From positions 62,001-126,000 of IMG/VR virus record IMGVR_UViG_3300035180_001778: 64,000 nt of DNA; one strand, 5' to 3'. This document shows, piece after piece, positions 758 to 34,494 of this stretch (the stretch's first letter is position 1; each line of letters opens with the position of its first letter). A program made the translations under genes and the position numbers. Below the pieces are notes generated by a model. It was not told the DNA's origin and did not search any database. It was given only the letters and a program-made list of their open reading frames with translations.

Positions 758-1125
758 GCTTCCACCACTGCCGGAATCAGGAGGTCTTGAGGCGTGAACT
801 GCTCCTCGAACTTCTTGAGGATGGGGAACGCCGTTGCTGCGTCATCTTCGAACGACCGACGCACGTCGTAAAGCGCATTCCGGAAGGAATTCTCTATGAC
901 GTGCGTCAGGATGGCTTTTTGAGGAGGATCCGAGAGATCCCAGGTCTTGAGGTGCCCCACCCACTCGGCGTGAGCGGACTTCTCGATGTCGTCTTCCAAC
1001 CCGAGCATGCGATGGTAGGGACCGATGTCCCCCTCCTCTCGACTTCTCGGGAGGTAGACAGTCCTTCGAGCCAGACTGCGAAGAAGGCGTTGGGCGAGGT
1101 GTTGAGCGAGAAGAGCGGAGGGCAT
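754..1125 (-). CDS. Hypothetical protein (123 aa)
   Basis: ORF; GGTGTC variant of the promoter motif 10 nt upstream of ATG. Confidence 0.75.
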   Translation of the reverse strand: MPSALLAQHLAQRLLRSLARRTVYLPRSREEGDIGPYHRMLGLEDDIEKSAHAEWVGHLKTWDLSDPPQKAILTHVIENSFRNALYDVRRSFEDDAATAFPILKKFEEQFTPQDLLIPAVVEA

Positions 1126-1170
1126 CGCCTATACTGACACCGAATCCGCTCCCAAGCAGAGAGGGATCGT

Positions 1171-1965
1171 TCAGCCGCCGAAAGGACCGCCGAGTTCGAG
1201 GCCGGCATCCTTGAGGACGTCGTCCGTGCTCTTGCGCTTCACGACGGACGCCTTGGGAGTCGTGGCGGGAGCCTCGTCTTCGACGGGAGCTGCCTTCACT
1301 TCCGATTCCGCCTTCTTGTCTTCGTCCGAGGACGCCTTGACAGGCTCGACGGCAGCCTTGGGCGAGCTGCCCTTGGCGAGCTTCTGCGCGACGAGGGCAG
1401 GGGGAGCCTCGTACGAGGACACGACGCGATAGAAGCCGCGTCCCTTGGCCGGGACCTTCTCGAAGGTCTCCTTGGCCGAGGAGAGGGTGTACGAGATGTA
1501 TCCTCGCGGGTTGTCCGAGAAGGGCAACCAGCCCATCTCCTTCATCTCCGTGAAGAGGGTGTCCGCGTTCACGATGCGATCCCCAGCCGTGACTGCCATG
1601 GCGTCGTGCAGCTTGGGACGATCCCCATTGGCCACCTGGCGACGGCCTTCCGCGGCTCGGCTCATGCCCGCCACCTTGGGCTTCGGGTCTGCGGCGGACT
1701 CGTCCTTGGCCTTCGGCTTGCGACCCGGCTTGCCCTTCGGCTTCACAGGTTCCGGAGTGCTCGTGGCATCCTCCGTTGCAGCCTTCGGCTTGCGGCCGGG
1801 CTTGCCCTTGGGGGCCGCTGCGGGAGCTGCTGAGGCCGACGATCCGTCACCGAAGATTTCGACGAACTTCGTCACCTTGTCCGCGGCCTTCACCGCTTCG
1901 GCCTGCTTCGTGGCAACTTCGGCCTGAAGCTCGGATAGGGTGCTCTCGTACGTGATCTTGTTCAT
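1171..1965 (-). CDS. Histone-H1-like/AT-hook-like DNA-binding protein with central winged-helix-like domain
   Basis: Lys/Ala/Pro-rich; two KGKPGRKPK repeats; globular segment LHDAM..GWLP..YISYTLS..RGFYRV. Confidence 0.6.
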   Translation of the reverse strand: MNKITYESTLSELQAEVATKQAEAVKAADKVTKFVEIFGDGSSASAAPAAAPKGKPGRKPKAATEDATSTPEPVKPKGKPGRKPKAKDESAADPKPKVAGMSRAAEGRRQVANGDRPKLHDAMAVTAGDRIVNADTLFTEMKEMGWLPFSDNPRGYISYTLSSAKETFEKVPAKGRGFYRVVSSYEAPPALVAQKLAKGSSPKAAVEPVKASSDEDKKAESEVKAAPVEDEAPATTPKASVVKRKSTDDVLKDAGLELGGPFGG

Positions 1966-2069
1966 ATTGGGATGATCTCCAGATGCACATGCCGTCTCTC
2001 GGTCCCTTTGGGGTATGCCGAAGACGGTAAGATGGTTCCCTGTGATAGGACCCTAACCTGGAGGATCTG

Positions 2070-2602
2070 TCAAGGATATATTTTGGGGTCGGTTCCAATT
2101 CGAGAATTCAGGACTCTGAGATGCTTTTTGGAAACGTCCTCTTCACGAACGTTTCCAAAATTGCACTTCTTGATCTGGAAACACGTTGCAACCACGCCAG
2201 GCCCAGCCTTGAGCCCTTCACAACGTTCGCAGATAGCTGTCCCAAAATTCAGACGGAACCGTAGCCGAGCACCTTCCGCGAGAAGCTCGTGGTAGGCCTC
2301 AGAGAGCTTCTCAACGGCGGCAAAGACCTGGGTGGGGTCTCCGGTCGAGAAGCTCTGGAGAGCTTCGTCAGCAGGGTCTACTTCTTGGGGAACTCCCGCT
2401 CGATGTCCGCCTGGCAGATGATCCCCATCCGACGGAGAGCTTGCTCGGTCTGCCCCTTCGACACGGCCATTCGTAGACCGGGAAGATGACGGGAGTCGAT
2501 CGTCTGAGCGGAGGTGAGGACCTGCGTCATCAGCCTGTGCCACTCGATTGCGTTCTTCGGAGCCAAGGACTGCGTCTGCGTCTCCAGTAGGCGGGTCTTC
2601 AT
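2070..2602 (-). CDS. Hypothetical protein split by an apparent -1 frameshift near 2387-2390
   Basis: GC3-rich frame 2602-2378 (MKTRLLE..EREFP) joins the frame ending at 2070 (QEVDPADEAL..CERC..C..KC) if one C is added to a C4 run; 533+1 nt = 178 codons. Confidence 0.55.
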
Positions 2603-2950
2603 TCACGACCCCACCCAGGGAGAGATCCCCTTGAACGTCGAGTAGAGCACGTTCGTCTTGGGGCCCTCCCGGTTGAAGTCGCTCTGCATCGCGTCCATCA
2701 GCTCCACAGTCGGGAGCCGTGTGACCGTGGCAGCCAGCTCCAGGAGGTCCGGGTTGGATGTGATCCGTAGGAGGTCCGCTCGGGACTTCTCATCGTGCTC
2801 CAGGCAGTAGATGACCTGCTCTCGGGTCATCGTGTCGAGGAGGCAGATACCGATCGCCCCCGGCGTGCCTCGCTCCAGCCACACGTTGTTCTTCGTGTCC
2901 CGATCGCAGTTGGTGCATCGGGGCTCCTCATCGCAACAGTTGTCGCTCAT
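2603..2950 (-). CDS. Hypothetical protein, Cys-rich N-terminus (115 aa)
   Basis: ATG at 2950 overlaps the upstream stop (ATGA). Confidence 0.7.
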   Translation of the reverse strand: MSDNCCDEEPRCTNCDRDTKNNVWLERGTPGAIGICLLDTMTREQVIYCLEHDEKSRADLLRITSNPDLLELAATVTRLPTVELMDAMQSDFNREGPKTNVLYSTFKGISPWVGS

Positions 2951-3216
2951 CGTCCGATCCAATCCGTCTGGAAAACCAAGATCCGCTCGTGTCCCTCAAG
3001 GCAGCGTAACCCCACCTTCCAGTAGAAGTGGGAGGCCTTTCGACGAAGGGCGTACGAGGTGGGCTCCGGTCGAGCCGCACAAGAGCAGCATGACAAGTTT
3101 TTCAGCGCTTGGACAACATCGTCGGCTCCGCCTGTCGGTTGAGCTTGACGGATATCTTCGTCCGTGAGGTCGGGGGAGTCTTCGTCCAGAGTACGGATAG
3201 ATATGTCAGGAGTCAT
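2947..3216 (-). CDS. Hypothetical protein (89 aa), possible Zn-binding (CCSC..C..H)
   Basis: 3' part of ORF 2947-3393; start placed at MTPDISI. Confidence 0.6.
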   Translation of the reverse strand: MTPDISIRTLDEDSPDLTDEDIRQAQPTGGADDVVQALKNLSCCSCAARPEPTSYALRRKASHFYWKVGLRCLEGHERILVFQTDWIGR

Positions 3217-3637
3217 CGTCGAGATCATCCTTCCCCAGAAGAGCTTTCGCCATAGCCGTCTTGAACTTGCGCGACTTGACGGGCTTGGGGATCTTGACGA
3301 TGGCATCCCTTCCTCGGGGGTCCGGCTGCAACCCTTTACTCTTCTCGAAGAGTTCGTACGCCGCGTCAAAGAGATAAGGCAACAGCCCGCCAATCAACTT
3401 GAGGGCTGTAACATGCCCCAACTCATAGGCATGCACCCTTTGTTCATCCCGCCGATACTGTATGTGCTTTTCACCGTTGACCCAACGATACTCCCCCACC
3501 TCGTAGGCCAAGCAAATCGTCGATTTGTATTCGATGTGTTGGACCCCCGGCAGCCTGCGCCGGCTGAATACCTTCCATTCGGTCGTGCGGGGCTTGTCCT
3601 TGGGGAGGGGTTTCCCCTTTTTCTTGGCTGGGGTCAT
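3206..3637 (-). CDS. Hypothetical basic protein with acidic tail (143 aa)
   Basis: ATG at 3637 overlaps the DUF1848 stop. Confidence 0.7.
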   Translation of the reverse strand: MTPAKKKGKPLPKDKPRTTEWKVFSRRRLPGVQHIEYKSTICLAYEVGEYRWVNGEKHIQYRRDEQRVHAYELGHVTALKLIGGLLPYLFDAAYELFEKSKGLQPDPRGRDAIVKIPKPVKSRKFKTAMAKALLGKDDLDDDS

Positions 3638-4476
3638 CGCACGAGAGGAAGAGACCTCTTGGTTGTGTTGCGCTTCTTGTCCGCGAGGTTCACGTCTGCC
3701 GCGTAGCAGTACTTGCACCCCATCGTACAGGTCTCGTTGATGGTGAACGGGTCGACCATCAGGACGCAGCCACAGCCCTCCGAAGGGGCCTTTTCCCGAC
3801 CTGCGAGGAAGAAGTCTTCCGGCGGAGCACAGATACCCGAGGCGAGGTTCGCATGGGCATCCGGATGTCCGATGAGAAGCCGGTCCTCATTGCAGAGGAG
3901 GACCTTGACGCCGTGCTTCTCGCCCAGCTCGGCAATCTGCACGAGGATGTTGAGGCGATCGACGTCGGTCCGGGTTTCGGCCATGAGGTCGTTCGTCTGG
4001 AGGAAGGACAGGAAGACGCTCTTGAGCCCAGCATCCGCCGCGTGAACGAGGATCCGGCCGAACCGCTCGACGACGTTGGGGACCAGCGGGACGGGCGAGA
4101 AACGCCAGGTGACGTTCTCAGGGCCATAGATGACTGAGGCAGCTTTCAGTCCCGATGCCCCCTGGAGAAGGGTCGGGGCTCCCTTCTCCACTTCCTCCCA
4201 GCCCGTGACGGTGACGTGGATCTTGACCTTGAAGTCCCGGGGGAGACGCTGATCCATGACCAGGTTCCAGGGGTCCTTCGTCCAGAAGACGAGCCCGAGA
4301 GTATCTTCGGGCGCGAGAGACCACTTCGAAGGGACGCCGGTCCGCGGGTCGAAGCCCTCCATGAAGCCTTCCCGGAGGCTTTCCTTGAACCAGTCCCACT
4401 TGGCGGCCGGGACATCCGTCCACCGGCTGAGGCTGTAGGGGAGATTTTCTTCGCGACCGCTTCTGAGATTTCTCAT
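3634..4476 (-). CDS. DUF1848-family radical-SAM-like protein
   Basis: SLSRWTDVP..WF, LVFWTKDP and a C-terminal CxxxCxxC (CTMGCKYC); CGTGTA motif 9 nt upstream of ATG 4476. Confidence 0.75.
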   Translation of the reverse strand: MRNLRSGREENLPYSLSRWTDVPAAKWDWFKESLREGFMEGFDPRTGVPSKWSLAPEDTLGLVFWTKDPWNLVMDQRLPRDFKVKIHVTVTGWEEVEKGAPTLLQGASGLKAASVIYGPENVTWRFSPVPLVPNVVERFGRILVHAADAGLKSVFLSFLQTNDLMAETRTDVDRLNILVQIAELGEKHGVKVLLCNEDRLLIGHPDAHANLASGICAPPEDFFLAGREKAPSEGCGCVLMVDPFTINETCTMGCKYCYAADVNLADKKRNTTKRSLPLVR

Positions 4477-4511
4477 CGTCGTCTCTACACGCGTCGAGGG
4501 TCTCGGATCAA

Positions 4512-5024
4512 TCAGGCGCGGTACAAACCCACACCCAGGCCGGTGAAGAACCCAATCGCCGAGATGACGCCCCACCAAAAGTAGAACTGGACATTCGGGA
4601 AGAGCGTGATGCCCGAAGGGACGGTCACCACTTGCCCATCGAGCAACGTCTCCCGGAGCTTGAGCAGCATGTTGCTCCGCTCCAGCATGGCGGTCTCGGG
4701 CGTCACCTTGGCCAACTCCGCCTGGGAAGCGCTGAGGTTCGTGAACCAGAAGCCGATGTCGTTGTTCGGGGTGTCGAAGAAGACCGACGTGTTGCCAGAC
4801 GTGAGCCCCGCCCACTTGATGTACTGGAGGGCCGTCCCCAGCTCCGTGTATGCCAGCTCGACCGTGTTGGCGTCAGCGGCTCGCTTGAGATGCCCCTCGC
4901 AGTTCTGATCGAACCGGAGATCCTTGCACCCCGCGGTGATTCCGAAACCGAGGAGGAGGATGAGAAAGAACACTCCGAGGATGAGGGGGTTCTTGGGGGA
5001 GGGCTTATTTCCGTAGGTGGGCAT
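4512..5024 (-). CDS. Membrane protein with N- and C-terminal transmembrane helices
   Basis: Hydrophobic LILGVFFLILLLGFGITAG and FYFWWGVISAIGFFTGLGVGL; GGTGTA-N10-ATG. Confidence 0.75.
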   Translation of the reverse strand: MPTYGNKPSPKNPLILGVFFLILLLGFGITAGCKDLRFDQNCEGHLKRAADANTVELAYTELGTALQYIKWAGLTSGNTSVFFDTPNNDIGFWFTNLSASQAELAKVTPETAMLERSNMLLKLRETLLDGQVVTVPSGITLFPNVQFYFWWGVISAIGFFTGLGVGLYRA

Positions 5025-5051
5025 GTCCCCCAAGTACACCAACTGGAGGGA

Positions 5052-6311
5052 TTACTCTGAGTCCATTTCCTTGAGGGCCGCCTCGATCGCGTCCATGTCG
5101 AGGTCCTGGATCTGCTTGGCGACCTTGGCCATGACGAACTTGGCGATCCCCTCGTCCACCTTGGCGTCCTCATCCGATGCGAGGAAGTGGTGAACATGCT
5201 TGTGAATGCCCTCCCCAATCTCGATGTACTCGCTGAGCCCGTCGATGTGTCCCAGGATGTCGGCTGCCGCTCGTGCTGCCAGGTTCTTGGTGAGGGTCTT
5301 TCCGAAGGCCCCTGCAAGAGCGAGAGGCCCACCACTGACTGTCAGAGCCGTTGCCGCAGCGGTGATGGCCATGTGCTTGGCCAATGTCTTGAAAGCGTGC
5401 TTCTGCTCGGGGGTCATCGAACCCCCCTTGATGACAGCCTTCACCCCGGCTGCCGCTTCCTTGTACTCCTTCACCTCGTTCTTCACGGTGGTGATGGCAT
5501 GCTGCACGACGTTGTGCGGGGCGTCCATCAGCTTCTTGTGGGCCCCCATGAGGGCCGTTCGACGATAGGCATCGTCGGTGAAGAACTGCTTGACGGCCGC
5601 GGGCGCATCCTCGTAGAACTTCTTCGCTTTGGCCCCGAGTCCTTGCAGGCGCTCCTTCCAGGACTTCTTGGGTGCATCATGCTCATGCTCCCCGCCACCC
5701 CCATGATCTTCCTTTTTGGTGACGGTGTGATTCGCAGGGTCGGCTTGAGGGTGCTCGTGCAGGTACTCTTTCATTTCCTCGGGCGATGAGTGCTCCATCG
5801 CAAGCTGCATCTGGAAACGAGCGACAACGCGGAGAAGTGTGCGGGATTGCGTCATGTGAGGCCTCGGTCGAAAAGTAGGGAGCATCAGTCGTCGGTCGTA
5901 GCGATCTCGCAGCTCTTTCCAATCGTTCCCCGAGGGGATCAACTGGGCCAGTTGCTTCGCTTCTTTTTCAGCGAGCTGCCAGGCATGCGGTCCCAACGTC
6001 GTCAGGATCTTGTTGGGGTCATGGGGCCATTTCTTCCGCATCATGTCCAAAATGGGGGTCTTCATCCAGACCTTCCCCAAATCACTGAGGTCGTAGATGA
6101 CGAACGCGCTCAGCTCGTTAATCTGAGCGTAATTGGCCATGCCCTTGTGGTAACTGGCCCCATCCGTTTCCTGAATCCCAGTGAACCCCGTGTCTTGGAG
6201 AGAGTGCAGGCACGCGAGGATCTTCGACATGGCCTGACGAAAATCCTCGGGCAAGGCTGAAGCCCAAGATGCTTGAAAGCTCCGCGCGACACGATAGACG
6301 ATGGGTAGCAT
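5052..6311 (-). CDS. RVA-leader protein(s); 419-aa ORF that may be two genes (second start ATG 5855)
   Basis: MLPIVYRVARSF at the start; MTQSRTLLRVVARF at 5855 preceded by GAGG; YLHEHPQADPANHTV motif. Confidence 0.7.
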   Translation of the reverse strand: MLPIVYRVARSFQASWASALPEDFRQAMSKILACLHSLQDTGFTGIQETDGASYHKGMANYAQINELSAFVIYDLSDLGKVWMKTPILDMMRKKWPHDPNKILTTLGPHAWQLAEKEAKQLAQLIPSGNDWKELRDRYDRRLMLPTFRPRPHMTQSRTLLRVVARFQMQLAMEHSSPEEMKEYLHEHPQADPANHTVTKKEDHGGGGEHEHDAPKKSWKERLQGLGAKAKKFYEDAPAAVKQFFTDDAYRRTALMGAHKKLMDAPHNVVQHAITTVKNEVKEYKEAAAGVKAVIKGGSMTPEQKHAFKTLAKHMAITAAATALTVSGGPLALAGAFGKTLTKNLAARAAADILGHIDGLSEYIEIGEGIHKHVHHFLASDEDAKVDEGIAKFVMAKVAKQIQDLDMDAIEAALKEMDSE

Positions 6312-7102: not shown

Positions 7103-7129
7103 ACTGAGGGGAGGGCACAAGAGAAAATG

Positions 7130-7480: not shown

Positions 7481-7503
7481 GCCCACACCCCCCTACAAGA
7501 GGA

Positions 7504-7962: not shown

Positions 7963-8036
7963 GCGAGACTCTTGAAACCTTCGGAAAACCTCAAATGCCA
8001 GACGATCCCTGCCACAGCCGCCATATCAAAGAACTC

Positions 8037-8756: not shown

Positions 8757-8759
8757 GGG

Positions 8760-9029: not shown

Positions 9030-9032
9030 GGG

Positions 9033-10576: not shown

Positions 10577-10586
10577 GTTGATCTAG

Positions 10587-10592
10587 TACACC
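10587..10592 (-). promoter_or_regulatory. GGTGTA element 10 nt upstream of clpX ATG
   Basis: TACACC on + at 10587-10592, ATG at 10576. Confidence 0.6.
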
Positions 10593-10593
10593 A

Positions 10594-12965: not shown

Positions 12966-13355
12966 TTACACCGAGAACTGGTCCTCCCAGCTCTTGATCT
13001 TGGTCCCGCGGTACATGCGCTGGTTCCCCGGCTTGGGTTCCGCGTGCATCGTCAGCGTGTTCATGGGTCCCGAGCGGCCCCCAGGGAGCTTCACCACGTA
13101 GGTCTTCCCCTGGCACTCGATGACGCCCCGACCGCCCGCCAAGAGCGCACCGAAGACCGCTCGGGGCGTCCCGAGGTCGGCCCGGAACCGGATGAACGTA
13201 GAGGTTCCGACGCTCATCGTGTCGAGGCTTTCCAACCTCCGGAAGAGCACCTGTGCTGTCTTGGAGGCCATCATCACCGCTTTTGCCACGTCATGCGACG
13301 TCTCATAGCGCGTGGACTGAACTGCGAAGTATGTCGAGAGGTCGATATCATCCAT
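12966..13355 (-). CDS. Hypothetical protein (129 aa)
   Basis: ORF; start at MDDIDL. Confidence 0.7.
   Translation of the reverse strand: MDDIDLSTYFAVQSTRYETSHDVAKAVMMASKTAQVLFRRLESLDTMSVGTSTFIRFRADLGTPRAVFGALLAGGRGVIECQGKTYVVKLPGGRSGPMNTLTMHAEPKPGNQRMYRGTKIKSWEDQFSV
12967..12972 (-). promoter_or_regulatory. GGTGTA element 10 nt upstream of RNA ligase ATG
   Basis: 15-nt GGACTCTTTACACCG identical to 23994-24008. Confidence 0.6.
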
Positions 13356-16496: not shown

Positions 16497-16517
16497 GGAG
16501 TCCTAATACACCAGGAC

Positions 16518-16993: not shown

Positions 16994-17479
16994 TTACACC
17001 GGGTCTTCTTGAGGGATCCCCCATTTGATGAGGTTCACGTTCTGGTAGCGCGCGTCGAACGTGACTTCCTTCCCGAGCCAGGCGGGGTGCTCGATGTACT
17101 CCGTCGAGTTCTTCAGCTCAACCTCCGCAAGCCAGAGCCCTTCGAGGTGGCCCCCAAAGCGGTCGACCTCCCAGAGATGCACCGCAGTGTACACCTTGAA
17201 CCTGACCTTCGTCAGGGTGGCCGGGCACATGGCGAGCAACGAAACTCCGTCCTTGTAGGGAATTTCGTACTCGAACTCGGGACGTTCGAGTAGACCCGGA
17301 CCTTTGACGGTGAGGAAAGCCTGGAATGCGTTGGGAGCTTCCAGCGTGGTACGAACCCGCACGCAGGGTTTCTCCGAGAGGTAGCCCTGGACGATGTTCG
17401 TCCCACCACCCCGATAGGCCTCGGGGTGGAAGTACTCGGTGGTGGTGAGGAGGAACTTGCGCTCGAATTCAGTGCCCAT
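16994..17479 (-). CDS. CYTH (triphosphate tunnel metalloenzyme) domain protein
   Basis: EFERKFL, VRVR, LTVKG, EFEYEIP, WEVDRF, LAEVEL, WLGKEVT; GGTGTA-N10-ATG. Confidence 0.9.
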   Translation of the reverse strand: MGTEFERKFLLTTTEYFHPEAYRGGGTNIVQGYLSEKPCVRVRTTLEAPNAFQAFLTVKGPGLLERPEFEYEIPYKDGVSLLAMCPATLTKVRFKVYTAVHLWEVDRFGGHLEGLWLAEVELKNSTEYIEHPAWLGKEVTFDARYQNVNLIKWGIPQEDPV

Positions 17480-17502
17480 ACGGGCATAGTACACCGAAAG
17501 CG

Positions 17503-17944: not shown

Positions 17945-18498
17945 AGGTCGTCTCCAAGTTTGTCCCACAGGGTAGGACGTGCGTTTATGACTTCTACAGT
18001 ATCTCCAATCCTCACAACCCCCTTGAGGTTGAACAGGAGAAGGTTTCTGGCGGCTGGCGTGTCTTGCACGTTATCAGACATGATGTACCTCCCGAGAGTT
18101 TCGGGGGTAGCCACAGCCAATTCACAGCCCTTGTAGGCTATGCGACTCCCCTGGTAGTCGAGGTCCTGCGATTCAAACCAGGTTGCAAGAGTGTCTTCAG
18201 GGACCCGAGCATTCGACAATGCCGCTCTCCACAGCATCTCAATCGCGCGATCCTCAAGTATCCTATCAAAGATCGCGACGGGCTCGCACAAGACACGACG
18301 AGCCCTGTCCTTGACTTCCCCTTCCATGATGAGAGGGTATCCGTGAGCCGGAGACTCCCCCAGCCGATAGTACAACCCTGGGTCCAAGTCGAAGTACGCA
18401 GGGACCCCCATGGGGAGAAGTTCAGGAAGGAAGCAGTCGAGAGCCTGCATCGCCCAGAGACCTACACCGCGAATTTGAGATTCAAGTTTACGGGCCAC
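17941..18498 (-). CDS. Hypothetical protein with tail RPTLWDKLGDDL (185 aa)
   Basis: ORF with ATGA overlap to the downstream gene. Confidence 0.65.
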   Translation of the reverse strand: MARKLESQIRGVGLWAMQALDCFLPELLPMGVPAYFDLDPGLYYRLGESPAHGYPLIMEGEVKDRARRVLCEPVAIFDRILEDRAIEMLWRAALSNARVPEDTLATWFESQDLDYQGSRIAYKGCELAVATPETLGRYIMSDNVQDTPAARNLLLFNLKGVVRIGDTVEVINARPTLWDKLGDDL

Positions 18499-20984: not shown

Positions 20985-21008
20985 CCGGTGCGTCTACACC
21001 GGATGAGA
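20979..21008. repeat. 12-bp perfect inverted repeat enclosing a GGTGTA promoter motif
   Basis: TCTCATCCGGTG-cgtcta-CACCGGATGAGA. Confidence 0.8.
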
Positions 21009-24001: not shown

Positions 24002-24007
24002 TACACC
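24002..24007 (-). promoter_or_regulatory. GGTGTA element 10 nt upstream of AAA ATG
   Basis: TACACC at 24002-24007, ATG at 23991. Confidence 0.6.
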
Positions 24008-24679: not shown

Positions 24680-24732
24680 GTCTTGTCTCTCCGGTAGCTC
24701 CGGTAGCTTCGGTGGTGTGGGGGACAGCCTAT

Positions 24733-25278
24733 CTATACACCAGAACCGCGGAGCTTGACCGTGCCTCCAGGTGAAATAGTCGGATCCGTTGTGGGAGGAA
24801 GAGAAGAAGCGGCCCACGGATCTCTTGAAGGAGTGACGGGGGCCCCTACCATTTTTCCCGATTGATCCGGGGCATTTGCCAGGGACAACCGGCGCGGGAG
24901 GACCAGCTTGGAGCTGGGAACGGGCGGAACCGAAATGATGGAAGCCGGGGAAACGGGAGCCGTCTCCAGCTTTTCAGCTTCCGCCAGGGGGTCGATCCAC
25001 CCCGAAGAGCGAATCTCAGGGGTGCGCCCGACATACAGGGTCAGGAATCGTTGACCCTGGATCTTCATGTAGCGGGGATCTTGGGGATCCATCTGCGGGG
25101 GGTTGTTGAACAATCGATCCTCCCAGCTCTGGATTCGACGCTCGAATTTAACCCCACTCAAAAGGCTACGAGAACACTCCGAAGTCATGCAACGGGAGCA
25201 GCACTCGGCCGTGAACTGGTCGAGCGACGCCCCGTCCACGTTGCATTCCCCGTACAAATCTCGACGTTCCGAAGCCAT
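24733..25278 (-). CDS. Hypothetical protein, Cys-rich N-terminus (CCSRC..C) and Pro-rich tail
   Basis: 181-aa ORF between polA and DUF2997. Confidence 0.75.
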   Translation of the reverse strand: MASERRDLYGECNVDGASLDQFTAECCSRCMTSECSRSLLSGVKFERRIQSWEDRLFNNPPQMDPQDPRYMKIQGQRFLTLYVGRTPEIRSSGWIDPLAEAEKLETAPVSPASIISVPPVPSSKLVLPRRLSLANAPDQSGKMVGAPVTPSRDPWAASSLPPTTDPTISPGGTVKLRGSGV

Positions 25279-25318
25279 GAGTGAGGATAATACCCGAACG
25301 TTTCAGTATATGCCAGGA

Positions 25319-29216: not shown

Positions 29217-29376
29217 CGTCGTCATCCTCCAAAAGGTGAGTCCAAAAGACCGGGAGGTTCGCTCGTTCTCGTTGCTTCTCCTGAACGAGAAGCGCGAACA
29301 TCTCATAGACCTTCAAGGTCGCAGGTCGGAGCCAGGCCCAATCCGCCTCCCAATCGTCAGATGTGCGTTCGTTCAC
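29206..29376 (-). CDS. Small protein with tail VFWTHLLEDDDDGI (56 aa)
   Basis: GTG 29376 overlaps the upstream TGA. Confidence 0.6.
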   Translation of the reverse strand: MNERTSDDWEADWAWLRPATLKVYEMFALLVQEKQRERANLPVFWTHLLEDDDDGI

Positions 29377-29603
29377 AGGTCGTCCTCCAGGTAATACCAC
29401 ACTGTCTTATGGGTCGGAATCGCACAAGACAACGCATACCCATGTCGAGTCATGGGCTCCAGGTCTTCCGGCTCCAGGTCCAAAAGGGCCATGGCCGTCT
29501 GTTCTTTCCCCTCTTGAGACAGATGAGGGAAGAGATTATGCACCACCCGCACAACCAGGAGCGCGTGAACCCGAAACTTTTCTTCCGTCTCGATTTGGGG
29601 CAT
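29373..29603 (-). CDS. Small protein with tail TVWYYLEDDL (76 aa)
   Basis: Starts 1 nt after the helicase stop. Confidence 0.7.
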   Translation of the reverse strand: MPQIETEEKFRVHALLVVRVVHNLFPHLSQEGKEQTAMALLDLEPEDLEPMTRHGYALSCAIPTHKTVWYYLEDDL

Positions 29604-29604
29604 C

Positions 29605-31068
29605 TCACACGTTGAACATCTCGTCGAGCACTTGCTTGTGCTCCTCGACGCTCATCCCCTTGCCCTGGTACATATCCATGTTGTAGATCCGCTTCGAGCT
29701 GAAGTGGACCGACGCGAGGAAGGGCTCGAAGATCGGGTTGTCCCGATTCTTGAGGTTGCAGAACAGGGTGGTGCCGTTCGCCCGATGGTTCTCATCCAGG
29801 TAGGTTGTCGTCAGCACATCGGCCGACTTCTCGACCTGGTTGGCGTAGGCCACGGCGGACATCTTGTATTTGCCCTCGTTCTTGGACGCCTCGTCCTTGC
29901 CTTGCCGGTTGATCTGGAAGAGCATGAGGACAGGGATCCGCTCCCCGTGATTGAAGTGCAGAGCGAGACGCTTCGCATCCCGAACGACAGAGTTCAGCTC
30001 GACGCCGTAATCCTTGGACCTCTTGGTCTTGCGGGCCTCGACCTCTTGCCCGTGGTCGATGACGATCAGCCCCACTTCCATCTGCTTGTGGAGAAGCTCG
30101 CACTCCAGGCGAATGTCATCCATGGTCACCTCCCGGTCAGGGGAGATGATCTCGCAGTGGCAGTAGTCCGGGTTGTTGGCGAAGTCGTCAACAACCCTCT
30201 CGTAGAAGGCTTCCTCCGCGGGGGATAGCTCCCCATCCCGGACCTTCCGGTAATCGAGAGGCACGTACCCCATGGCCCGCCACTTCATGTTGGCCGAGTG
30301 GAGCACGTAGAACTGGAGGCGGATCTGCTCGTAGGGCATTTCCAGCGACCAGTAGACGATGTTCGTCCGATACCGGGTGACGAGGTTGTAACACCAGTTG
30401 AGCGAGAACGTGGTCTTCAGCTCGCCGGGGAAGGCCGCGTGAACCCACAGCTCTCCGCGCTTGATCCCGTGGGTGTTCTTGTCGATCTCGTTGAGCCCGC
30501 AGAACTTCCCCCAGGTCTTCTCCTTGTTGACCTTGGCGTCCTGGTATTGATCGAGGATGGCTTGGCCATCCTTCCGGATGTCCCCCGAGGTCCTCGCGTT
30601 GTACTCCGGGATGATCAGGTCGTGAGACTTCGAGGTGAAATGCACGAGAGCATCTCGAACCCCGTGCTTCCGGATCTTCTCGCGCCCCTCGACGATCTCC
30701 AAACCGCGGGTGACGATCTCGTGCGTCTCCTTGAGGAGGGCGATCGTCTTGTTCGTGTTCTGTTGCTCCAGGATCGTTTGGAGCAGGGCGGCGAAGTTGG
30801 TTCGGACGTAGGCCGGCGAAGCCTCGATGTCCGGGATGCGCTCCTGGATCTCGACGTCGTCCATGCGGACGAAATAGTCCCGGATTGTCTGGACAGCGGG
30901 GATCTCCAACCGCTGTTGGAAGTACGACTTGACGTACTCGAAGATTTTCTCGTCGTCGGGACGATTCCAGCCGATCTGAGCGGCAATGAGCCGCTGGAGG
31001 TTCTGCGTCAGGTGCTCTTGGGGTGTCTGCCCATCAAAATCGATGATGGATCGAAGTAGGCGCTTCAT
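29605..31068 (-). CDS. dnaB: DnaB-like (SF4) replicative helicase
   Basis: RGELWVHAAFPGELKTT, SLEM, LIVIDH, MLFQINRQG, EKSADV, KNRD. Confidence 0.88.
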   Translation of the reverse strand: MKRLLRSIIDFDGQTPQEHLTQNLQRLIAAQIGWNRPDDEKIFEYVKSYFQQRLEIPAVQTIRDYFVRMDDVEIQERIPDIEASPAYVRTNFAALLQTILEQQNTNKTIALLKETHEIVTRGLEIVEGREKIRKHGVRDALVHFTSKSHDLIIPEYNARTSGDIRKDGQAILDQYQDAKVNKEKTWGKFCGLNEIDKNTHGIKRGELWVHAAFPGELKTTFSLNWCYNLVTRYRTNIVYWSLEMPYEQIRLQFYVLHSANMKWRAMGYVPLDYRKVRDGELSPAEEAFYERVVDDFANNPDYCHCEIISPDREVTMDDIRLECELLHKQMEVGLIVIDHGQEVEARKTKRSKDYGVELNSVVRDAKRLALHFNHGERIPVLMLFQINRQGKDEASKNEGKYKMSAVAYANQVEKSADVLTTTYLDENHRANGTTLFCNLKNRDNPIFEPFLASVHFSSKRIYNMDMYQGKGMSVEEHKQVLDEMFNV

Positions 31069-31958
31069 CCGAGCGGTCCCCCTCCCCCGCCGCCATTCCC
31101 GAACTTCTTCGGCTTGAACTTCGACTTGTAGCCGCCGTTATCCCCCAAAGCCCCGTCTGAATTGTTGCTGGGGTAGCTCCGAGCTTCGAAACGAGGCTTC
31201 GGGGCTGCTTCCCAGGTCTTCTCCGTCACGATCTGTGTCTGTGGCGCAGAGTCCATATCCACGTCAACAGGCCCCGAAGGAACGTAGAATCCTTGAGGTG
31301 CTTCTTTCGGCCGATGCTTGTTCGTCAAGTCCATGATCGTGAATCTCTTTTCGATGTACTCAGCCACGTTCTCATCGTAGGAGAAGTGACCGGGACCGAA
31401 AAAGCTATCTGGAGTCTCGTTGATCCATGTAGCCTTTGAGGCAGCTTCACGAAGCATGAGAGCTTCCTTGAGAATCCCGGGCATGGCTTTATTGGGGTAC
31501 CCCAATTTGCCAATACGGAGGATCACAAGGTCGACATCCGGCCCCAAGATGTCGGTCAACGAGTTGAACGTCGGGGCCTCATCACGCTTGCTTTTGGAAC
31601 GAGCCTTGTAGCTCTCATCTCCGACGTAAACGATCTTGAGTCGCTCGTCGGTCAGGACTCGGAAAGAGAAGAAGAGCCCTTTCCCAACCAGAGCGCATTT
31701 TAGATGAGGGAGAAGGTCTTCCCATGCCCCCTTGAGGAAGAGGTTCTTGGCGGTCAGGTCGGTCTTGGGGTCCTTGTCAACGCCTCCCATCTCGAACAGA
31801 GGGCTCGACGTGAGGGAAGGGGCGAGAGCGATCTCTGCCCCAAGGTGTTCCTTCATCGCTCGGGCGAACGCGCAGATGCACTGGCGGACCGTGAGGTCGT
31901 CCACTTCGATCCGCCCCGTCCCCCCACACTTGGAGCAGACCTTTTTCTCGTCAGTCAT
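31065..31958 (-). CDS. DnaC/IstB-like helicase-loader homologue with degenerate ATPase motifs
   Basis: N-terminal CSKC..QCIC; no GKT; VDLVILRIG in place of Walker B; directly upstream of dnaB. Confidence 0.5.
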   Translation of the reverse strand: MTDEKKVCSKCGGTGRIEVDDLTVRQCICAFARAMKEHLGAEIALAPSLTSSPLFEMGGVDKDPKTDLTAKNLFLKGAWEDLLPHLKCALVGKGLFFSFRVLTDERLKIVYVGDESYKARSKSKRDEAPTFNSLTDILGPDVDLVILRIGKLGYPNKAMPGILKEALMLREAASKATWINETPDSFFGPGHFSYDENVAEYIEKRFTIMDLTNKHRPKEAPQGFYVPSGPVDVDMDSAPQTQIVTEKTWEAAPKPRFEARSYPSNNSDGALGDNGGYKSKFKPKKFGNGGGGGGPLG

Positions 31959-31977
31959 TCGCTTCGTCTCTACACCG

Positions 31978-32685
31978 CTAAATGTCCGACTCGAAGTCCA
32001 GGATGTCCCACGACGTCAGGCGTCCGTAGGTCCTGGGGGTCTCTTCCACAGGAGGGGCCAACGCCACAAATGGATTCGCATCAGGGTTCTCTTGCCCCAC
32101 CCTCATCTCCCCATTCTCTCGAAGAACGTAGTCGACGGGCACTTGGGGCTGGGGCCCATTCTCGACACGTACCGGAAGTGCTCGTTGCTCTTGTGCCTGA
32201 GCCAAGAGGGTTTCTTCTTGGCTTGCTACTCTATAATTACGTAAAATCATCGAGTAATTGACGCCATAGGATTCCCACCTCCCTCCTTCTTGAGGGAGGG
32301 ATATCAGCATCACTTCAGAGTTGTCGATCTGCGTGATTCTTCGGAGGGAATTCCCCGTGTCCCCTCCGAAGTTGTCCGTAGGTAGACGGAACACCCAGGA
32401 GTTCCGCCGTACGAAACTCAACTGTTCGGCCGTCCCAATGTAGTTGAACGACGAGAAATCAGAGAGCATACCCTGTGTAGGCACCCACACCTTCTCGAAC
32501 TCTTCTTGGAAGAGAGTCCCACACAATAGTTGGGACTCACCCACATGAAGAACCTCTACCACTCTCGTGTAGGTATATTCTCGTACCGCACCGTCATCTG
32601 TGGCGCGGTAGTCTTGGGTCCACCGCGTGCCCACGAGAAGTTGGGGGTTGGCTCGAAAGGAAGCACCGAGGTCGGAGGGAACCAT
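31978..32685 (-). CDS. Hypothetical protein with tail TSWDILDFESDI (235 aa)
   Basis: GGTGTA-N10-ATG; lower GC. Confidence 0.7.
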   Translation of the reverse strand: MVPSDLGASFRANPQLLVGTRWTQDYRATDDGAVREYTYTRVVEVLHVGESQLLCGTLFQEEFEKVWVPTQGMLSDFSSFNYIGTAEQLSFVRRNSWVFRLPTDNFGGDTGNSLRRITQIDNSEVMLISLPQEGGRWESYGVNYSMILRNYRVASQEETLLAQAQEQRALPVRVENGPQPQVPVDYVLRENGEMRVGQENPDANPFVALAPPVEETPRTYGRLTSWDILDFESDI

Positions 32686-32702
32686 GTGCTTGACCTACAC
32701 CG

Positions 32703-34463
32703 TCATTCGCCGGAACGCATTTGCTTGAGCAGCTCCTTCGTCCCCGCCCCAACGCCGTCCTTCTTGAAGTCGAGGGCCCCAACGGCGGCCTCCCCGAGAA
32801 CCTTGTCGACGAGGTTCTTCTTGCCCATGAGGAGGGTCAGGATGTGGTGGTCGATCGTCTTCTTGTTCTTCCCCGACGCCTTGGGACGAACCGCCACGAT
32901 GTGGTAGGCGCACACATTGGGGTGAGGGCTCCCGATGCGAATCGGCCTCCCAAGGGTCTGCACGTAGTTCCCCCAGCTCCAGGGGGCATCGTAGAACACG
33001 AGAGCGCTGGCCGCCTGGAGGTTGATGGCCTCGCTTCCGGCGTCCGTGATGAAGATGACCTTCATGTCCGAGTCGAGGTTCTGGAACTCCTTTTGATGGT
33101 CCCGGCGAGCCGAGTCCGAGTCCTTCCCCGTGATGCGCCCGCTCTTGATCCCCTTCTCCTTGAGAATGGCCTGTAGGCGCCCCACAAGAGACTCGAAGCG
33201 GGTGTAGACGATGACCTTCTCGCCATCCAGCTCGTCAAGGATGAGGTCCTGGAACGCCTGCTCCTTGCTTCCGAGCTTCGCGATCGTGTGGCTGGCGATC
33301 TCGGCGTCGAGCCGTTCATGACCCCCAGGGAGCAGCTCGTCCCCCGCCTTGTACTTGAGCAAGGTGAGAGAGTCGACGACCTGTTGGCAGTAGCAGAGCG
33401 AGACGAAGGCCTTGTGCTCCTCGTAGTCCTTGGTGGACCCGTCCCCCATTTCGAGGACACCCGAGAGGGCCTCCTGGTACTTCTGGTCTTCTGCGGCCGA
33501 CAGTTCCACGATGATCTGCTTCGTGGTGAGCACGGGTAGCTCGGCAGACACCGCGTGCTTCGGACGCCCAAGGAAGTAGGGGTCGATCCTCTCCCGGAAC
33601 ACCTCCAGGTTCTTGTACCCCACGACCATGGGGATCTTCCGGTTCCCTGCCACCCTCTTCTGCTCGACGATACAGAAGGATGCCAGGAAGGCGGTCTTCG
33701 TCGCAAAGAGACGAGGAACGATCACCTTGAAGATCGAGAAGCCCTCCATCAAGTTGTTCTTGAGGAGCGTCGCCGTGAGCCCGTAGCACCTCTTCGCTCG
33801 ATCCGAGAGGTAGCGACACGTCTGCCACGTCTTGGTAGAGTGGTTCTTGAATGCCGTCGCCTCATCGTAGATGACGACCAGATCCATCCCCCGAGTGAGC
33901 CCGTCAAGATAGCCAGGCAACACGGTCGGCTTCTCCTTGGGGGTCTTCCCAGGGATAGACTGGCTCCCCTGGTCCCAGTCCCGAACGATGATCGCGTAGT
34001 TGACGATGAGCACAGAGAGAGGAGCGTCCTCTCCGAGGGGTGCTTTGGCCCACTTCTCGTAGACCGCTTTGCGTTCTTCGAGAGACCCGCTGACGACGTA
34101 GCACTTGACGCCCGTCGTGAAGCGTTCGATCTCTTCTCCCCACTGGCGTAGGACGCTCTTGGGGGTGACGATGATGACCCGGTTGTTGGGCTCCCGGGGA
34201 CGTAGGTAGCAGAGGGCGGCGATCACCTGGATCGTCTTCCCGAGCCCAGTCCCATCCCCCAAGATCATCCGGGTCATGGTCAGAAGGTGGAAGACCCCCT
34301 GAACCTGGTAGTACCGTAGGCGGAAGTCCTGCGCTTGCCCGTCAAGGCCGAGGATGCTCGCCCTGAGCATCGGGGTGGGCTTCAGTGCAACAGTCGTTGA
34401 AGCCCGAACCTTCTTCAGCGTTTCGTAAGCTGTCGTGTCTTGCGGCGATAGAGCGGTCGTCAT
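32703..34463 (-). CDS. SNF2-family helicase
   Basis: LRYYQVQG, ILGDGTGLGKT, IYDEAT, LTATLLKN, KVIVYTRF, AGSEAINL, QTLGRPIRIG; GGTGTA-N11-ATG. Confidence 0.92.
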   Translation of the reverse strand: MTTALSPQDTTAYETLKKVRASTTVALKPTPMLRASILGLDGQAQDFRLRYYQVQGVFHLLTMTRMILGDGTGLGKTIQVIAALCYLRPREPNNRVIIVTPKSVLRQWGEEIERFTTGVKCYVVSGSLEERKAVYEKWAKAPLGEDAPLSVLIVNYAIIVRDWDQGSQSIPGKTPKEKPTVLPGYLDGLTRGMDLVVIYDEATAFKNHSTKTWQTCRYLSDRAKRCYGLTATLLKNNLMEGFSIFKVIVPRLFATKTAFLASFCIVEQKRVAGNRKIPMVVGYKNLEVFRERIDPYFLGRPKHAVSAELPVLTTKQIIVELSAAEDQKYQEALSGVLEMGDGSTKDYEEHKAFVSLCYCQQVVDSLTLLKYKAGDELLPGGHERLDAEIASHTIAKLGSKEQAFQDLILDELDGEKVIVYTRFESLVGRLQAILKEKGIKSGRITGKDSDSARRDHQKEFQNLDSDMKVIFITDAGSEAINLQAASALVFYDAPWSWGNYVQTLGRPIRIGSPHPNVCAYHIVAVRPKASGKNKKTIDHHILTLLMGKKNLVDKVLGEAAVGALDFKKDGVGAGTKELLKQMRSGE

Positions 34464-34473
34464 TGAGTCCTGT

Positions 34474-34494
34474 CTACACCGAGCTTTGGTGTAG
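34474..34494. promoter_or_regulatory. Divergent pair of GGTGTA elements
   Basis: CTACACC-gagcttt-GGTGTAG between SNF2 (-) and the 34546 gene (+). Confidence 0.6.

What the first reader, a model, noticed from the sequence alone, without database searches (positions are those of the whole stretch)
1125..34480. GGTGTA-N10-ATG: a phage promoter element with leaderless-mRNA geometry
Seen: GGTGTA precedes the start codon by exactly 10 nt at 5024, 10576 (clpX), 12956, 16496, 17479, 20984, 23991 (AAA) and 32685. The spacer is 9 nt at 16985, 11 nt at 34463 and 12 nt at 31958. Variants are GGTGTC-N10 at 1125 and CGTGTA-N9 at 4476. Two copies share 15 identical nt (12959-12973 and 23994-24008). With N10 the TA falls at -12/-11 relative to the A of ATG, the position of a sigma-70-type -10 box, so transcription would start at the start codon. 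The -7 T is mostly absent and I saw no fixed -35. Structural genes lack the element. Inference: an early/middle regulon read by a phage-encoded or alternative sigma factor, producing leaderless mRNAs.
Basis: partly seen in the sequence, partly recalled or inferred. Interest (0 to 1): 0.75.

Follow-up and report, generated by a model that had tools for sequence, protein, structure and literature searches.

The report
Phage promoter abutting start codons
A six-letter DNA word, GGTGTA, sits exactly ten bases before the start codon of about 80 genes of an uncultured 350-kb phage and of its relatives. It behaves like a promoter that starts transcription at the start codon itself, so these messages would have no leader; this has not been shown with RNA data.

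Summary
All listed coordinates check out; the motif is on the minus strand. GGTGTA-N10-ATG occurs 8 times in the window against 0.13 expected. In the whole 350,469-bp virus record the spacing histogram peaks sharply (N9 14, N10 51, N11 12, N12 7). Six relatives with 53-68% GC show the same peak.

Indirect evidence favours a promoter over a ribosome-binding signal:
- The motif precedes a tRNA gene at N10.
- It is ten-fold enriched on the tRNA strand of the tRNA cluster.
- Genes with the motif lack a Shine-Dalgarno (SD) sequence and use ATG almost exclusively.
- Where an orthologue's ATG lies 23-27 nt away, an SD appears.

It is a two-part promoter with the same TGTA core, and it also abuts the ATG. 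Together the two classes head about 31% of genes. Both are rare in the structural region, where SD-led genes dominate.

No RNA polymerase gene was found. Two sigma-like proteins are encoded. Which factor reads the motif is unresolved, and no RNA data exist. This is a new variant of a known kind.

The parts
5035..5040 (-). GGTGTA, N10 to the ATG at 5022-5024; 170-aa ORF 4512-5024
10587..10592 (-). GGTGTA, N10 to the ATG at 10574-10576 of clpX (9326-10576). A terminator-like hairpin, 10600-10623, lies directly upstream.
   Evidence: The G001 orthologue also has GGTGTA-N10-ATG.
12967..12972 (-). GGTGTA, N10 to the ATG at 12954-12956. The ORF is open for only 19 codons. The frame then changes in an A5 run into an RNA-ligase-like ORF with a KxDG motif, down to 12391.
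16507..16512 (-). GGTGTA, N10 to the ATG at 16494-16496; 127-aa ORF
16995..17000 (-). GGTGTA, N9 to the ATG at 16983-16985; 155-aa ORF
17490..17495 (-). GGTGTA, N10 to the ATG at 17477-17479; 161-aa ORF
18463..18468 (-). GGTGTA, N12 to the ATG at 18448-18450; 169-aa ORF.
20995..21000 (-). GGTGTA, N10 to the ATG at 20982-20984; 56-aa ORF
24002..24007 (-). GGTGTA, N10 to the ATG at 23989-23991 of an AAA ATPase (22417-23991)
   Evidence: GGTGTA is kept upstream of the orthologue in all but one (L015, a partial match) of the 13 related loci; L003 is 100% and L012 94% identical, L007/L008 and L006/L010 share the same upstream sequence.
24736..24741 (-). GGTGTA 56 nt before the ATG at 24679, with GGAGAGA in the leader. 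This is a leadered copy.
31971..31976 (-). GGTGTA, N12 to the ATG at 31956-31958; 297-aa ORF
   Evidence: The G001 orthologue has N10.
32696..32701 (-). GGTGTA, N10 to the ATG at 32683-32685; 235-aa ORF
34475..34480 (-). GGTGTA, N11 to the ATG at 34461-34463 of an SNF2-type helicase (32703-34463). It forms an inverted pair with a + strand GGTGTA at 34488-34493.
   Evidence: The G001 orthologue has N11.
45520..45525 (-). GGTGTA 38 nt before the ATG of a 711-aa gene in the structural region, with GGAGG in the leader. This is a leadered copy.
4474..4511 (-). Class-2 promoter: TTGATC 4506-4511, 16-nt spacer, TGTA 4486-4489, N9, ATG 4474-4476 (280-aa ORF).
34510..34548 (+). Class-2 promoter: TTGATC, N16, TGTA 34532-34535, N10, ATG 34546 (129 aa)
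34941..34977 (+). Class-2 promoter: TTGATC, N16, TGTAGGACCCCC, ATG 34975 (166 aa)
35472..35508 (+). Class-2 promoter: TTGATC, N16, TGTAGGACCCCC, ATG 35506 (96 aa)
1136..1141 (-). GGTGTC, N10 to the ATG at 1123-1125. Doubtful as a member.
   Evidence: GGTGTC shows no genome-wide peak.

Best explanation
GGTGTA is the core element of a promoter class that has no -35 box. It belongs to an uncultured jumbo phage (a virus record of 350 kb, 59.6% GC) and its relatives.

Geometry, shown from the sequence: the hexamer occupies -16 to -11 relative to the A of the ATG, so its TA falls at -12/-11. A pyrimidine precedes it at -17. C is preferred at -1.

Mechanism, inferred:
1. RNA polymerase bound at the element starts at, or within 1-2 nt of, the A of the ATG.
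2. The mRNA therefore has no leader and no Shine-Dalgarno (SD) sequence, and is translated from its 5'-terminal AUG.
3. Where the element lies further upstream (14-60 nt), the leader carries an SD.

GGTGTA is one of at least two promoter classes that share a TGTA core. The other is bipartite: (G)GTTGATC, a 16-nt spacer, then TGTAG(G/A), with the ATG 8 nt after TGTA. It is also leaderless.

The two classes head about 72 and 67 of 447 predicted genes. The GGTGTA class heads conserved replication-type genes. The bipartite class heads small, fast-evolving genes. Both classes are sparse in the structural region, where SD-led genes prevail.

The element lacks the T at -7 that primary sigma factors need, and it is invariant across relatives spanning 53-68% GC. 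I therefore infer that host core polymerase reads it with a non-primary specificity factor, probably phage-encoded. There are two candidates: a 302-aa divergent ECF-like sigma (the extracytoplasmic-function group of the sigma-70 family) and a 236-aa protein with two sigma-region-4-like helix-turn-helix motifs. This last step is the weakest.
For: Spacing and specificity
- The genome-wide spacing peaks at N10. Only this hexamer, in this orientation, shows the peak.
- The logo shows no -35 signal, a pyrimidine (Y) at -17 and C at -1 in 29/42.

Transcription rather than translation
- GGTGTA-N10 precedes base +1 of the tRNA-Ile gene. The tRNA (anticodon TCA) gene at 302161 carries TTGATC-N16-(GG)TGTA-N12.
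- The tRNA cluster holds 21 copies on the tRNA strand and 4 on the other.
- SD-like words occur before 11% of class-1 genes, 14% of random positions and 42% of late-region genes.
- Leadered copies have an SD in 12/20 cases against 8/72 for start-abutting copies, p = 2e-5.
- The start codon is ATG in 132/139 genes of the two classes against 200/279 other genes, p = 3e-9.
- At the AAA orthologues, GGTGTA is kept. In L006/L010 the ATG lies 23 nt away and an AGGAG appears. In L005 it lies 27 nt away.

Conservation
- G001 shows the N10 peak (28 sites).
- Pattern against control in other relatives: G002 29 vs 2, G003 25 vs 2, G004 21 vs 0, G007 10 vs 4.
- 14/22 G001 orthologues of class-1 genes keep the motif at the start, against 14/110 for other genes, p = 1.8e-6.

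Independent geometry from class 2
- TTGATC-Nk-TGTA has k = 16 in 90 cases and almost no other value.
- With TGTA-N8-ATG this puts a true -35 box at -34 to -29 from the A of the ATG. C at -1 occurs in 37/41.

Who reads it
- Sigma-70 consensus promoters are not enriched in the window.
- T at -7 occurs in only 14/42. Positions 1, 2 and 6 of TANNNT are irreplaceable for the primary sigma of Deinococcus (PMC12340547).
- No RNAP gene was found.
- Sigma-like genes are present.
- The 302-aa sigma gene itself carries GGTGTA 42 nt upstream, plus a class-2 promoter abutting its ATG.
Against: - There are no RNA data. No RNA run was listed, so no 5' end has been seen.
- The TGTA core lies 10 nt before the ATG in this class but 8 nt before it in the bipartite class. 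If the start point is fixed relative to TGTA, class-1 mRNAs would carry a 2-nt leader.
- C at -1 is already 42% in other genes, so it is weak evidence for class 1.
- The tRNA-Ile case is a single instance. Chance is about 0.01-0.06 by my estimate.
- Terminator-like hairpins just upstream are anecdotal and are not enriched overall.
- Nothing ties either sigma-like protein to GGTGTA. The 302-aa protein scores below curated cut-offs, its model is poor (pLDDT 57) and it has no significant fold match.
- The record is only about 73% complete, so a polymerase gene could lie in the missing part.
- Gene calls and starts come from my own simple caller.
Confidence: 0.6

Rival explanations
1. Same promoter and same leaderless geometry, but read by the host's primary sigma holoenzyme with no phage factor. 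In this reading it is an unusual extended -10-type promoter: TA at -12/-11, with GGTG contacted upstream. This would resemble the -10-only leaderless promoters of Deinococcus-Thermus and Actinobacteria, and the -35-less middle/late promoters of Thermus phages.
For: - TA sits exactly where T-12/A-11 of a primary-sigma -10 box would be.
- TA-N10-ATG equals the 6-7 bp gap between TANNNT and the ORF reported for Deinococcus (PMC12340547).
- No polymerase gene and no canonical sigma gene is present.
- T at -7 is mildly over-represented (14/42 against about 20% base frequency).
Against: - T at -7 is absent in two thirds of sites. PMC12340547 reports that positions 1, 2 and 6 of TANNNT are irreplaceable.
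- The TG abuts the TA, without the one-base gap of TGnTATAAT.
- The hexamer is invariant in phages of 53-68% GC, which presumably have different hosts.
- Consensus sigma-70 promoters are not enriched.
Confidence: 0.22
2. GGUGUA is an mRNA element: a non-SD ribosome-binding or translation-enhancer signal 10 nt upstream of the AUG. The genes would be transcribed from promoters elsewhere.
For: - The distance to the start codon is fixed.
- The motif occurs before many consecutive genes in co-directional arrays, for example 16496, 16985 and 17479.
- GGUG can pair with the CACC of the 16S 3' tail (textbook knowledge).
Against: - The motif occurs before tRNA genes and is enriched on the tRNA strand.
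- In orthologues with a displaced ATG the motif stays put and a normal SD appears.
- Leadered copies carry an SD.
- The core is shared with a class that has a -35 box at a rigid 16-nt spacing.
- The bases before GGTG are pyrimidines, not GGA, and GGUG would end 12 nt from the AUG. That is too far for SD pairing of that part of the anti-SD (spacing rule from general knowledge).
- There are no other recognisable promoters in the window.
Confidence: 0.07
3. GGTGTA is an operator, the binding site of a phage regulator (repressor or activator) that overlaps promoters. It is not itself the core promoter element.
For: - The phage encodes a highly conserved protein with two helix-turn-helix motifs.
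- One site forms an inverted pair, TACACC-N7-GGTGTA, at 34475-34493.
Against: - The motif is strictly oriented and at a fixed distance from the ATG in about 80 sites. It has no partner half-site.
- No other conserved promoter element surrounds it that it could regulate.
Confidence: 0.06
4. GGUGUA marks an RNA-processing site. An endonuclease would cut polycistronic transcripts 10 nt downstream and create 5'-AUG mRNAs after transcription.
For: - The motif is common inside gene arrays.
- One copy lies 7 nt after a tRNA 3' end (genome 254563).
Against: - No known nuclease measures 10 nt from a hexamer (general knowledge).
- The bipartite class with a -35 box has the same geometry, which processing does not explain.
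- The strong ATG and C-1 context fits initiation.
Confidence: 0.03

Closest known systems
-10 region adjacent to ORFs (TANNNT) giving leaderless mRNAs in Deinococcus-Thermus and Actinobacteria (PMC12340547; PMC3160421; PMC4633059)
   Same: - A promoter -10-region element lies directly before the ORF, with TA at -12/-11 of the start codon.
- There is no SD.
- About a third of genes are affected.
- SD-led genes coexist with them.
   Different: - The sequence is GGTGTA, with no conserved T at -7 and an obligatory GGTG upstream.
- It belongs to a phage family, not a cellular genome.
- A second, bipartite class has TGTAG in place of a TATAAT-like box.
Thermus phage phiYS40 middle/late genes, transcribed as leaderless mRNAs from -35-less promoters (Sevostyanova et al. 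2007 J Mol Biol 366:420). The reference is listed in PMC12340547; the content is from my own knowledge, and the paper is not held.
   Same: - A large phage in which a whole temporal class of genes is leaderless.
- That class is driven by promoters without a -35 box.
   Different: - There the leaderless classes are middle and late, and the host primary sigma reads a TATAAT-like -10.
- Here the structural genes are the SD-led ones, and the element is not TATAAT-like.
ECF (group 4) sigma promoters, and phage-encoded ECF-like sigmas such as phiEco32 gp36 (own knowledge)
   Same: - The bipartite class has the ECF layout: a -35 box, a rigid 16-nt spacer and a short -10 core of the xGTx type.
- A divergent ECF-like sigma gene is present, and it is preceded by that promoter, as self-regulated ECF sigmas are.
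   Different: - The GGTGTA class has no -35 at all.
- The sigma has an insertion of about 120 aa between regions 2.2 and 2.3 and scores below family cut-offs.
- No link between this protein and either promoter has been shown.
T4 late promoters (TATAAATA at -10 only; gp55, gp33 and the sliding clamp) (own knowledge)
   Same: - The promoter consists of a single short element in the -10 region, with no -35.
- The phage's sigma-region-4-like protein is encoded next to the 5'-3' exonuclease and clamp-loader genes, much as T4 gene 33 lies near rnh.
   Different: - The sequence is different.
- It heads replication and unknown genes rather than virion genes.
- T4 late mRNAs have leaders.
- A gp55 homologue was not looked for.
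Jumbo phages phiKZ and AR9, with their own multisubunit RNA polymerases
   Same: - A giant phage genome with many short phage-specific promoter motifs.
   Different: - No leaderless transcript was detected in phiKZ (PMC8244752). AR9 leaders are 26-491 nt (PMC5312081).
- No polymerase homologue was found here.

Membership tests
Primary-sigma (sigma-70/sigmaA) -10 element TANNNT abutting an ORF | T at -12 and A at -11 | tested here: met
   TA of GGTGTA lies at -12/-11 in the N10 class.
Primary-sigma (sigma-70/sigmaA) -10 element TANNNT abutting an ORF | Conserved T at -7 (position 6 of the hexamer) | tested here: not met
   T occurs in 14 of 42 N10 sites and G in 15.
Primary-sigma (sigma-70/sigmaA) -10 element TANNNT abutting an ORF | Hexamer ends 6-7 bp before the ORF | tested here: met
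   TA-N10-ATG is the dominant spacing. The published 6-7 bp figure is quoted.
Extended -10 promoter (TGnTATAAT) | TG at -15/-14, one base before the hexamer | tested here: not met
   TG is at -14/-13 and abuts the TA. GG is at -16/-15.
ECF-type (group 4 sigma) promoter | A -35 box at a rigid 16-17 nt from a short -10 core | tested here: not met
   The GGTGTA class has no information content from -50 to -19. The sister class TTGATC-N16-TGTA does meet this feature.
Shine-Dalgarno ribosome-binding site | Complementarity to the 16S 3' tail at 5-10 nt from the AUG, and restriction to protein-coding genes | tested here: not met
   Only GGUG can pair. It ends 12 nt from the AUG and the upstream bases are pyrimidines. 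The motif precedes tRNA genes. An SD appears separately when a leader exists.
Leaderless mRNA | The primary 5' end is the A of the AUG (or lies within a few nt of it) | not testable with these tools
   No RNA run was listed.
Leaderless mRNA | AUG strongly preferred and no SD | tested here: met
   ATG in 132/139 against 200/279, p = 3e-9. SD words in 11% against 14% at random positions.
T4-type late promoter system | A -10-only promoter heading virion genes, read by a gp55-like factor | tested here: not met
   The architecture is -10-only. However, the motif heads clpX, helicases, ligase and an AAA ATPase, and is rare in the baseplate region. A gp55 homologue was not searched for.
Sigma-70 family (302-aa protein, G000 280166-281071, minus strand) | Regions 2 and 4 recognisable above family thresholds | tested here: inconclusive
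   - All 9 family members hit TIGR02937 (best E 3.4e-7, query 18 bits, cut-off 42.9).
- Pfam region 2 gives E 0.035.
- The alignment shows motifs like regions 2.1-2.2, 2.3-2.4 and 4.2.
- The model is poor and there is no significant fold match.

The most novel reading that the evidence does not exclude
A widespread clade of huge environmental phages may run a self-contained expression programme. About a third of its genes would be transcribed as leaderless mRNAs from two phage-specific promoter classes, GGTGTA at -16 to -11 and TTGATY-N16-TGTAG. Phage-encoded sigma-like factors would read them. One candidate is an ECF-like sigma with a large insertion. The other is a hyper-conserved protein with two sigma-region-4-like motifs, found on hundreds of contigs of up to 570 kb. 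Only the late virion genes would use Shine-Dalgarno initiation. The phage could then separate its pre-late translation from host-type initiation.
Probability: 0.3. Interest if true: 0.75.

Novelty: new variant of a known kind. Interest (0 to 1): 0.6.

Why it matters
- If 5'-end data confirm the reading, this would be the largest leaderless regulon described for a phage: about 140 genes in one genome.
- It would add a promoter element unlike TATAAT that is conserved across a family of huge uncultured phages.
- It gives a simple rule for correcting gene starts and finding transcription units in these genomes.
- It gives concrete in vitro tests for two uncharacterised sigma-like protein families.
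- The switch from leaderless non-structural genes to SD-led structural genes suggests that translation-initiation mode is part of the temporal programme.

Tried and rejected
- Shine-Dalgarno reading: rejected, see the second rival explanation.
- Canonical sigma-70 promoters: the scan found 1 against 4.8 expected in 1-20000, and 4 against 3.5 in 20001-40000.
- Phage RNA polymerase: PF00940, PF00562 and PF00623 gave nothing, and no DFDGD motif was found in 447 predicted proteins. PHROGs scans of 21 proteins, most of them over 600 aa, found no polymerase.
- RNA evidence: no RNA run was listed. Only DNA runs from sediment and microbial-mat metagenomes hold the sequence.
- Host:
  - megablast against phages gave no match.
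  - The nearest PolA is in a 485-kb uncultured phage, at 35% identity.
  - The ClpX atlas search was uninformative.
  - The AAA profile found nothing in genome contigs.
- Sigma candidate: the profile search against PDB sequences gave no hit. The AF2 model has pLDDT 57, and Foldseek gave nothing below E = 0.9, although sigma chains recur among the non-significant hits.
- Complex prediction of the sigma with its own promoter DNA was not folded by the tool. It is evidence for nothing.
- Late-gene promoter: k-mer search of 43 intergenic regions at 98-242 kb gave no convincing motif.
- Phage-encoded IF3, S21 and IF1: absent.
- More distant huge phages carrying the 236-aa protein (L054-L056): the 20-kb neighbourhoods held too few GGTGTA to judge.
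- Literature: no paper held describes GGTGTA as a phage promoter, or leaderless genes in huge phages.

Full report
**What the window is.** The window is bases 62001-126000 of a single 350,469-bp contig with 59.6% GC. It is an IMG/VR virus record, linear, and about 73% complete by CheckV.
- It encodes DNA polymerase A, a DnaB-type helicase, ClpX, an SNF2 helicase and an AAA ATPase.
- Elsewhere the record encodes an NAD-dependent ligase, a RecD-like helicase, ribonucleotide reductase and a 5'-3' exonuclease.
- It also carries baseplate proteins, 40 tRNA genes and a tmRNA gene.
- It is a jumbo phage with no close cultured relative. The nearest PolA is in a 485-kb uncultured phage, at 35% identity.
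- The DNA occurs in sediment and microbial-mat metagenomes. The host is unknown.

- GGTGTA occurs 29 times in the window against 9.7 expected. GGTGTA-N10-ATG occurs 8 times against 0.13 expected.
Almost all of these sites open long ORFs.
- Neither the reverse complement, nor permutations, nor single-base variants peak.
- Among 447 genes from a codon-usage gene caller, 72 have GGTGTA 9-13 nt before the start.
- The logo shows a pyrimidine at -17, GGTGTA at -16 to -11, no signal at all from -50 to -19, T at -7 in only 14/42, and C at -1 in 29/42.

Upstream regions of genes without GGTGTA revealed (G)GTTGATC, 16 nt, then TGTAG(G/A), with the ATG 8 nt after TGTA.
- The spacer is 16 nt in 90 exact cases and 15 nt in 4.
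- TGTA-N8-ATG occurs 51 times, with a smaller group at N11.
- This places a true -35 box at -34 to -29 from the A of the ATG, with C at -1 in 37/41.
- The class heads 67 genes. Many sites are in divergent pairs.
- It shares the TGTA core with GGTGTA. It has a pyrimidine, not GG, before that core.
- Because it is an unmistakable bipartite promoter whose geometry puts the start point on the ATG, it independently supports the leaderless reading.

**Promoter or ribosome-binding signal?** Several tests favour transcription.
1. GGTGTA-N10 precedes base +1 of a tRNA-Ile gene. The tRNA (anticodon TCA) gene at 302161 has TTGATC-N16-(GG)TGTA-N12. A tRNA-Ala gene has the hybrid element 51 nt upstream.
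2. In the 24-kb tRNA cluster there are 21 GGTGTA on the tRNA strand and 4 on the other.
3. Shine-Dalgarno (SD)-like words occur before 11% of class-1 genes, 14% of random positions and 42% of genes in the 100-240 kb region.
4. When GGTGTA lies 14-60 nt upstream of a start, an SD is present in 12/20 cases against 8/72, p = 2e-5.
5. ATG is the start in 132/139 genes of the two classes against 200/279 others, p = 3e-9. This fits the known need of leaderless translation for a 5' AUG. The comparison set does rest on my own start calls.
6. In 26/42 N10 sites the TA of the motif forms an in-frame TAA or TAG, so the ORF cannot start earlier. ClpX's zinc finger begins at residue 7.
7. Consensus sigma-70 promoters are not enriched in the window.

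**Comparative evidence.** The AAA ATPase has relatives at 50-61% identity on 10 other viral contigs of 53-68% GC, plus two contigs at 94-100% identity.
- GGTGTA is kept upstream of the orthologue in all of these loci but one, L015, a partial match. It often follows a hairpin plus a T-run.
- The spacing is N9-N13 in most.
- In L006/L010 the ATG is 23 nt away and an AGGAG lies 10 nt before it. In L005 the ATG is 27 nt away. The motif stays, and translation switches to an SD.
- The whole 362,937-bp relative G001 has the same peak: N10 28, N9 10, N11 10.
- Five more relatives exceed the reversed-pattern control: 29 vs 2, 25 vs 2, 21 vs 0, 4 vs 1 and 10 vs 4.
- 14 of 22 G001 orthologues of class-1 genes keep GGTGTA at the start, including clpX, ligase and the SNF2 helicase. 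For other genes the figure is 14 of 110, p = 1.8e-6.
- Class 2 exists in G001 as TTGATT-N16-TGTAGT-N6-ATG, with 16 copies. Its leadered members carry an SD. The exact TTGATC form is confined to G000 and a 94%-identical genome.
- Class-2 genes are rarely shared with G001 (5/67). Class-1 genes are shared more often (29/72).
- So GGTGTA heads the conserved replication-type core, and class 2 heads fast-evolving small genes. Which class is earlier is inference only.

**Who reads it?**
- No single-subunit or multisubunit RNA polymerase was found. The record is incomplete, so one could be missing.
- The element has T-12/A-11 at the right distance for a primary sigma but lacks T-7. Its TG abuts the TA. 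It is identical in phages of very different GC content.
- Positions 1, 2 and 6 of TANNNT are reported as irreplaceable in Deinococcus (PMC12340547).
- I therefore favour a non-primary, probably phage-encoded factor. I give this step only moderate weight.

Two candidates exist.

(a) A 302-aa protein (G000 280166-281071, minus strand).
- Its 9 homologues all hit the sigma70-ECF superfamily model below the curated cut-off (best E 3.4e-7).
- The alignment shows motifs like regions 2.1-2.2, 2.3-2.4 and 4.2, separated by an insertion of about 120 aa.
- Its structure model is poor and gives no significant fold match.
- Its gene carries a GGTGTA 42 nt upstream and a class-2 promoter abutting the ATG.
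- The G001 homologue is only 30% identical and lacks this arrangement.

(b) A 236-aa protein.
- It has a sigma region 4 match at residues 71-119 and a second weaker match.
- It is 67% identical in G001.
- It has 693 homologues at 60-76% identity among the 120 listed, on contigs of up to 570 kb. In the three neighbourhoods examined, and in G000, the gene directly follows the 5'-3' exonuclease and clamp-loader genes.

One tidy scheme is that the invariant factor reads the invariant GGTGTA while the fast-evolving sigma co-varies with class 2. This is a hypothesis, not a result.

**Open points.**
- TGTA lies 10 nt from the ATG in class 1 and 8 nt in class 2. This means either two recognition modes or a 2-nt leader in class 1.
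- No late promoter motif was found.
- No RNA data are available.
- The complex prediction was not run by the tool.

**Comparison with what is known.**
- The geometry is that of the '-10 region adjacent to ORFs' of Deinococcus-Thermus and Actinobacteria (PMC12340547, PMC3160421, PMC4633059).
- It also resembles the leaderless middle/late genes of Thermus phage phiYS40. That content is from my own knowledge; the paper is not held.
- The sequence fails the TANNNT test.
- The studied jumbo phages differ. No leaderless transcript was detected in phiKZ (PMC8244752). AR9 leaders are 26-491 nt (PMC5312081).
- No held paper mentions this motif.

**Verdict.** The feature is real. It is very probably a promoter with leaderless geometry (about 0.8), and I give 0.6 to the whole explanation including a non-primary, probably phage-encoded factor, whose identity is unresolved. 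It is a new variant of a known kind.

Noticed in passing
Genome-wide; in the window at 4474-4511 (-), 34510-34548 (+), 34941-34977 (+), 35472-35508 (+): A second promoter-like class, (G)GTTGATC-N16-TGTAG(G/A)-N~6-ATG. It has about 110 copies, often in divergent pairs, and it also abuts the ATG. In relative G001 it reads TTGATT-N16-TGTAGT.
   Followed up: yes
window 12897-12972 (-): The motif-linked ATG at 12956 opens only 19 codons. The frame then changes within a CAAAAAT run into an RNA-ligase-like ORF with a KxDG motif (12391-12900). The 100%-identical IMG/VR contig L003 has the same sequence. This is either a real frameshift or a shared homopolymer error.
   Followed up: partly
G000:C1:242600-265700 and 302161-302233: 40 tRNA genes and a tmRNA gene (tag ANDNALVPMQMAA). 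There is also a tRNA with anticodon TCA, called tRNA-SeC by ARAGORN, behind a hybrid TTGATC-N16-GGTGTA promoter. Eleven of the 41 tRNA/tmRNA genes are immediately preceded by CAT.
   Followed up: partly
G000:C1:212424-213134 (-) = L042:6427-7134: A 236-aa protein with two sigma-region-4-like helix-turn-helix motifs and no region 2. It has 693 homologues at 60-76% identity among the 120 listed, on contigs of up to 570 kb. In the three neighbourhoods examined, and in G000, the gene directly follows the 5'-3' exonuclease and clamp-loader genes. It looks like a hallmark gene of a large huge-phage clade.
   Followed up: partly
G000:C1:280166-281071 (-) = L052:1498-2403: A divergent ECF-like sigma candidate with an insertion of about 120 aa between regions 2.2 and 2.3. 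Two homologues carry a CxxC...CxxC zinc-ribbon in the insertion. Its gene has tandem GGTGTA and class-2 promoters.
   Followed up: partly
window 34475-34493: An inverted pair, TACACC-N7-GGTGTA. The minus-strand copy heads the SNF2 helicase gene. The plus-strand copy lies 16 nt before the -35 box of the class-2 promoter at 34510. This looks like a back-to-back divergent control region.
   Followed up: no
window 38405-64000 (-): A run of very large ORFs of 711-1414 aa, and a 2091-aa ORF that crosses the window end. Only baseplate-wedge and baseplate hits were found; most ORFs have no PHROG or Pfam match.
   Followed up: partly
G001, G002 (relatives of 363 and 312 kb): IMG/VR classes these two relatives as proviruses. 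I saw no host flank in G001 but did not examine its ends.
   Followed up: no
Class-2 -35 box, genome-wide: The -35 hexamer TTGATC contains GATC, a Dam-type methylation site. The G001 version, TTGATT, does not.
   Followed up: no
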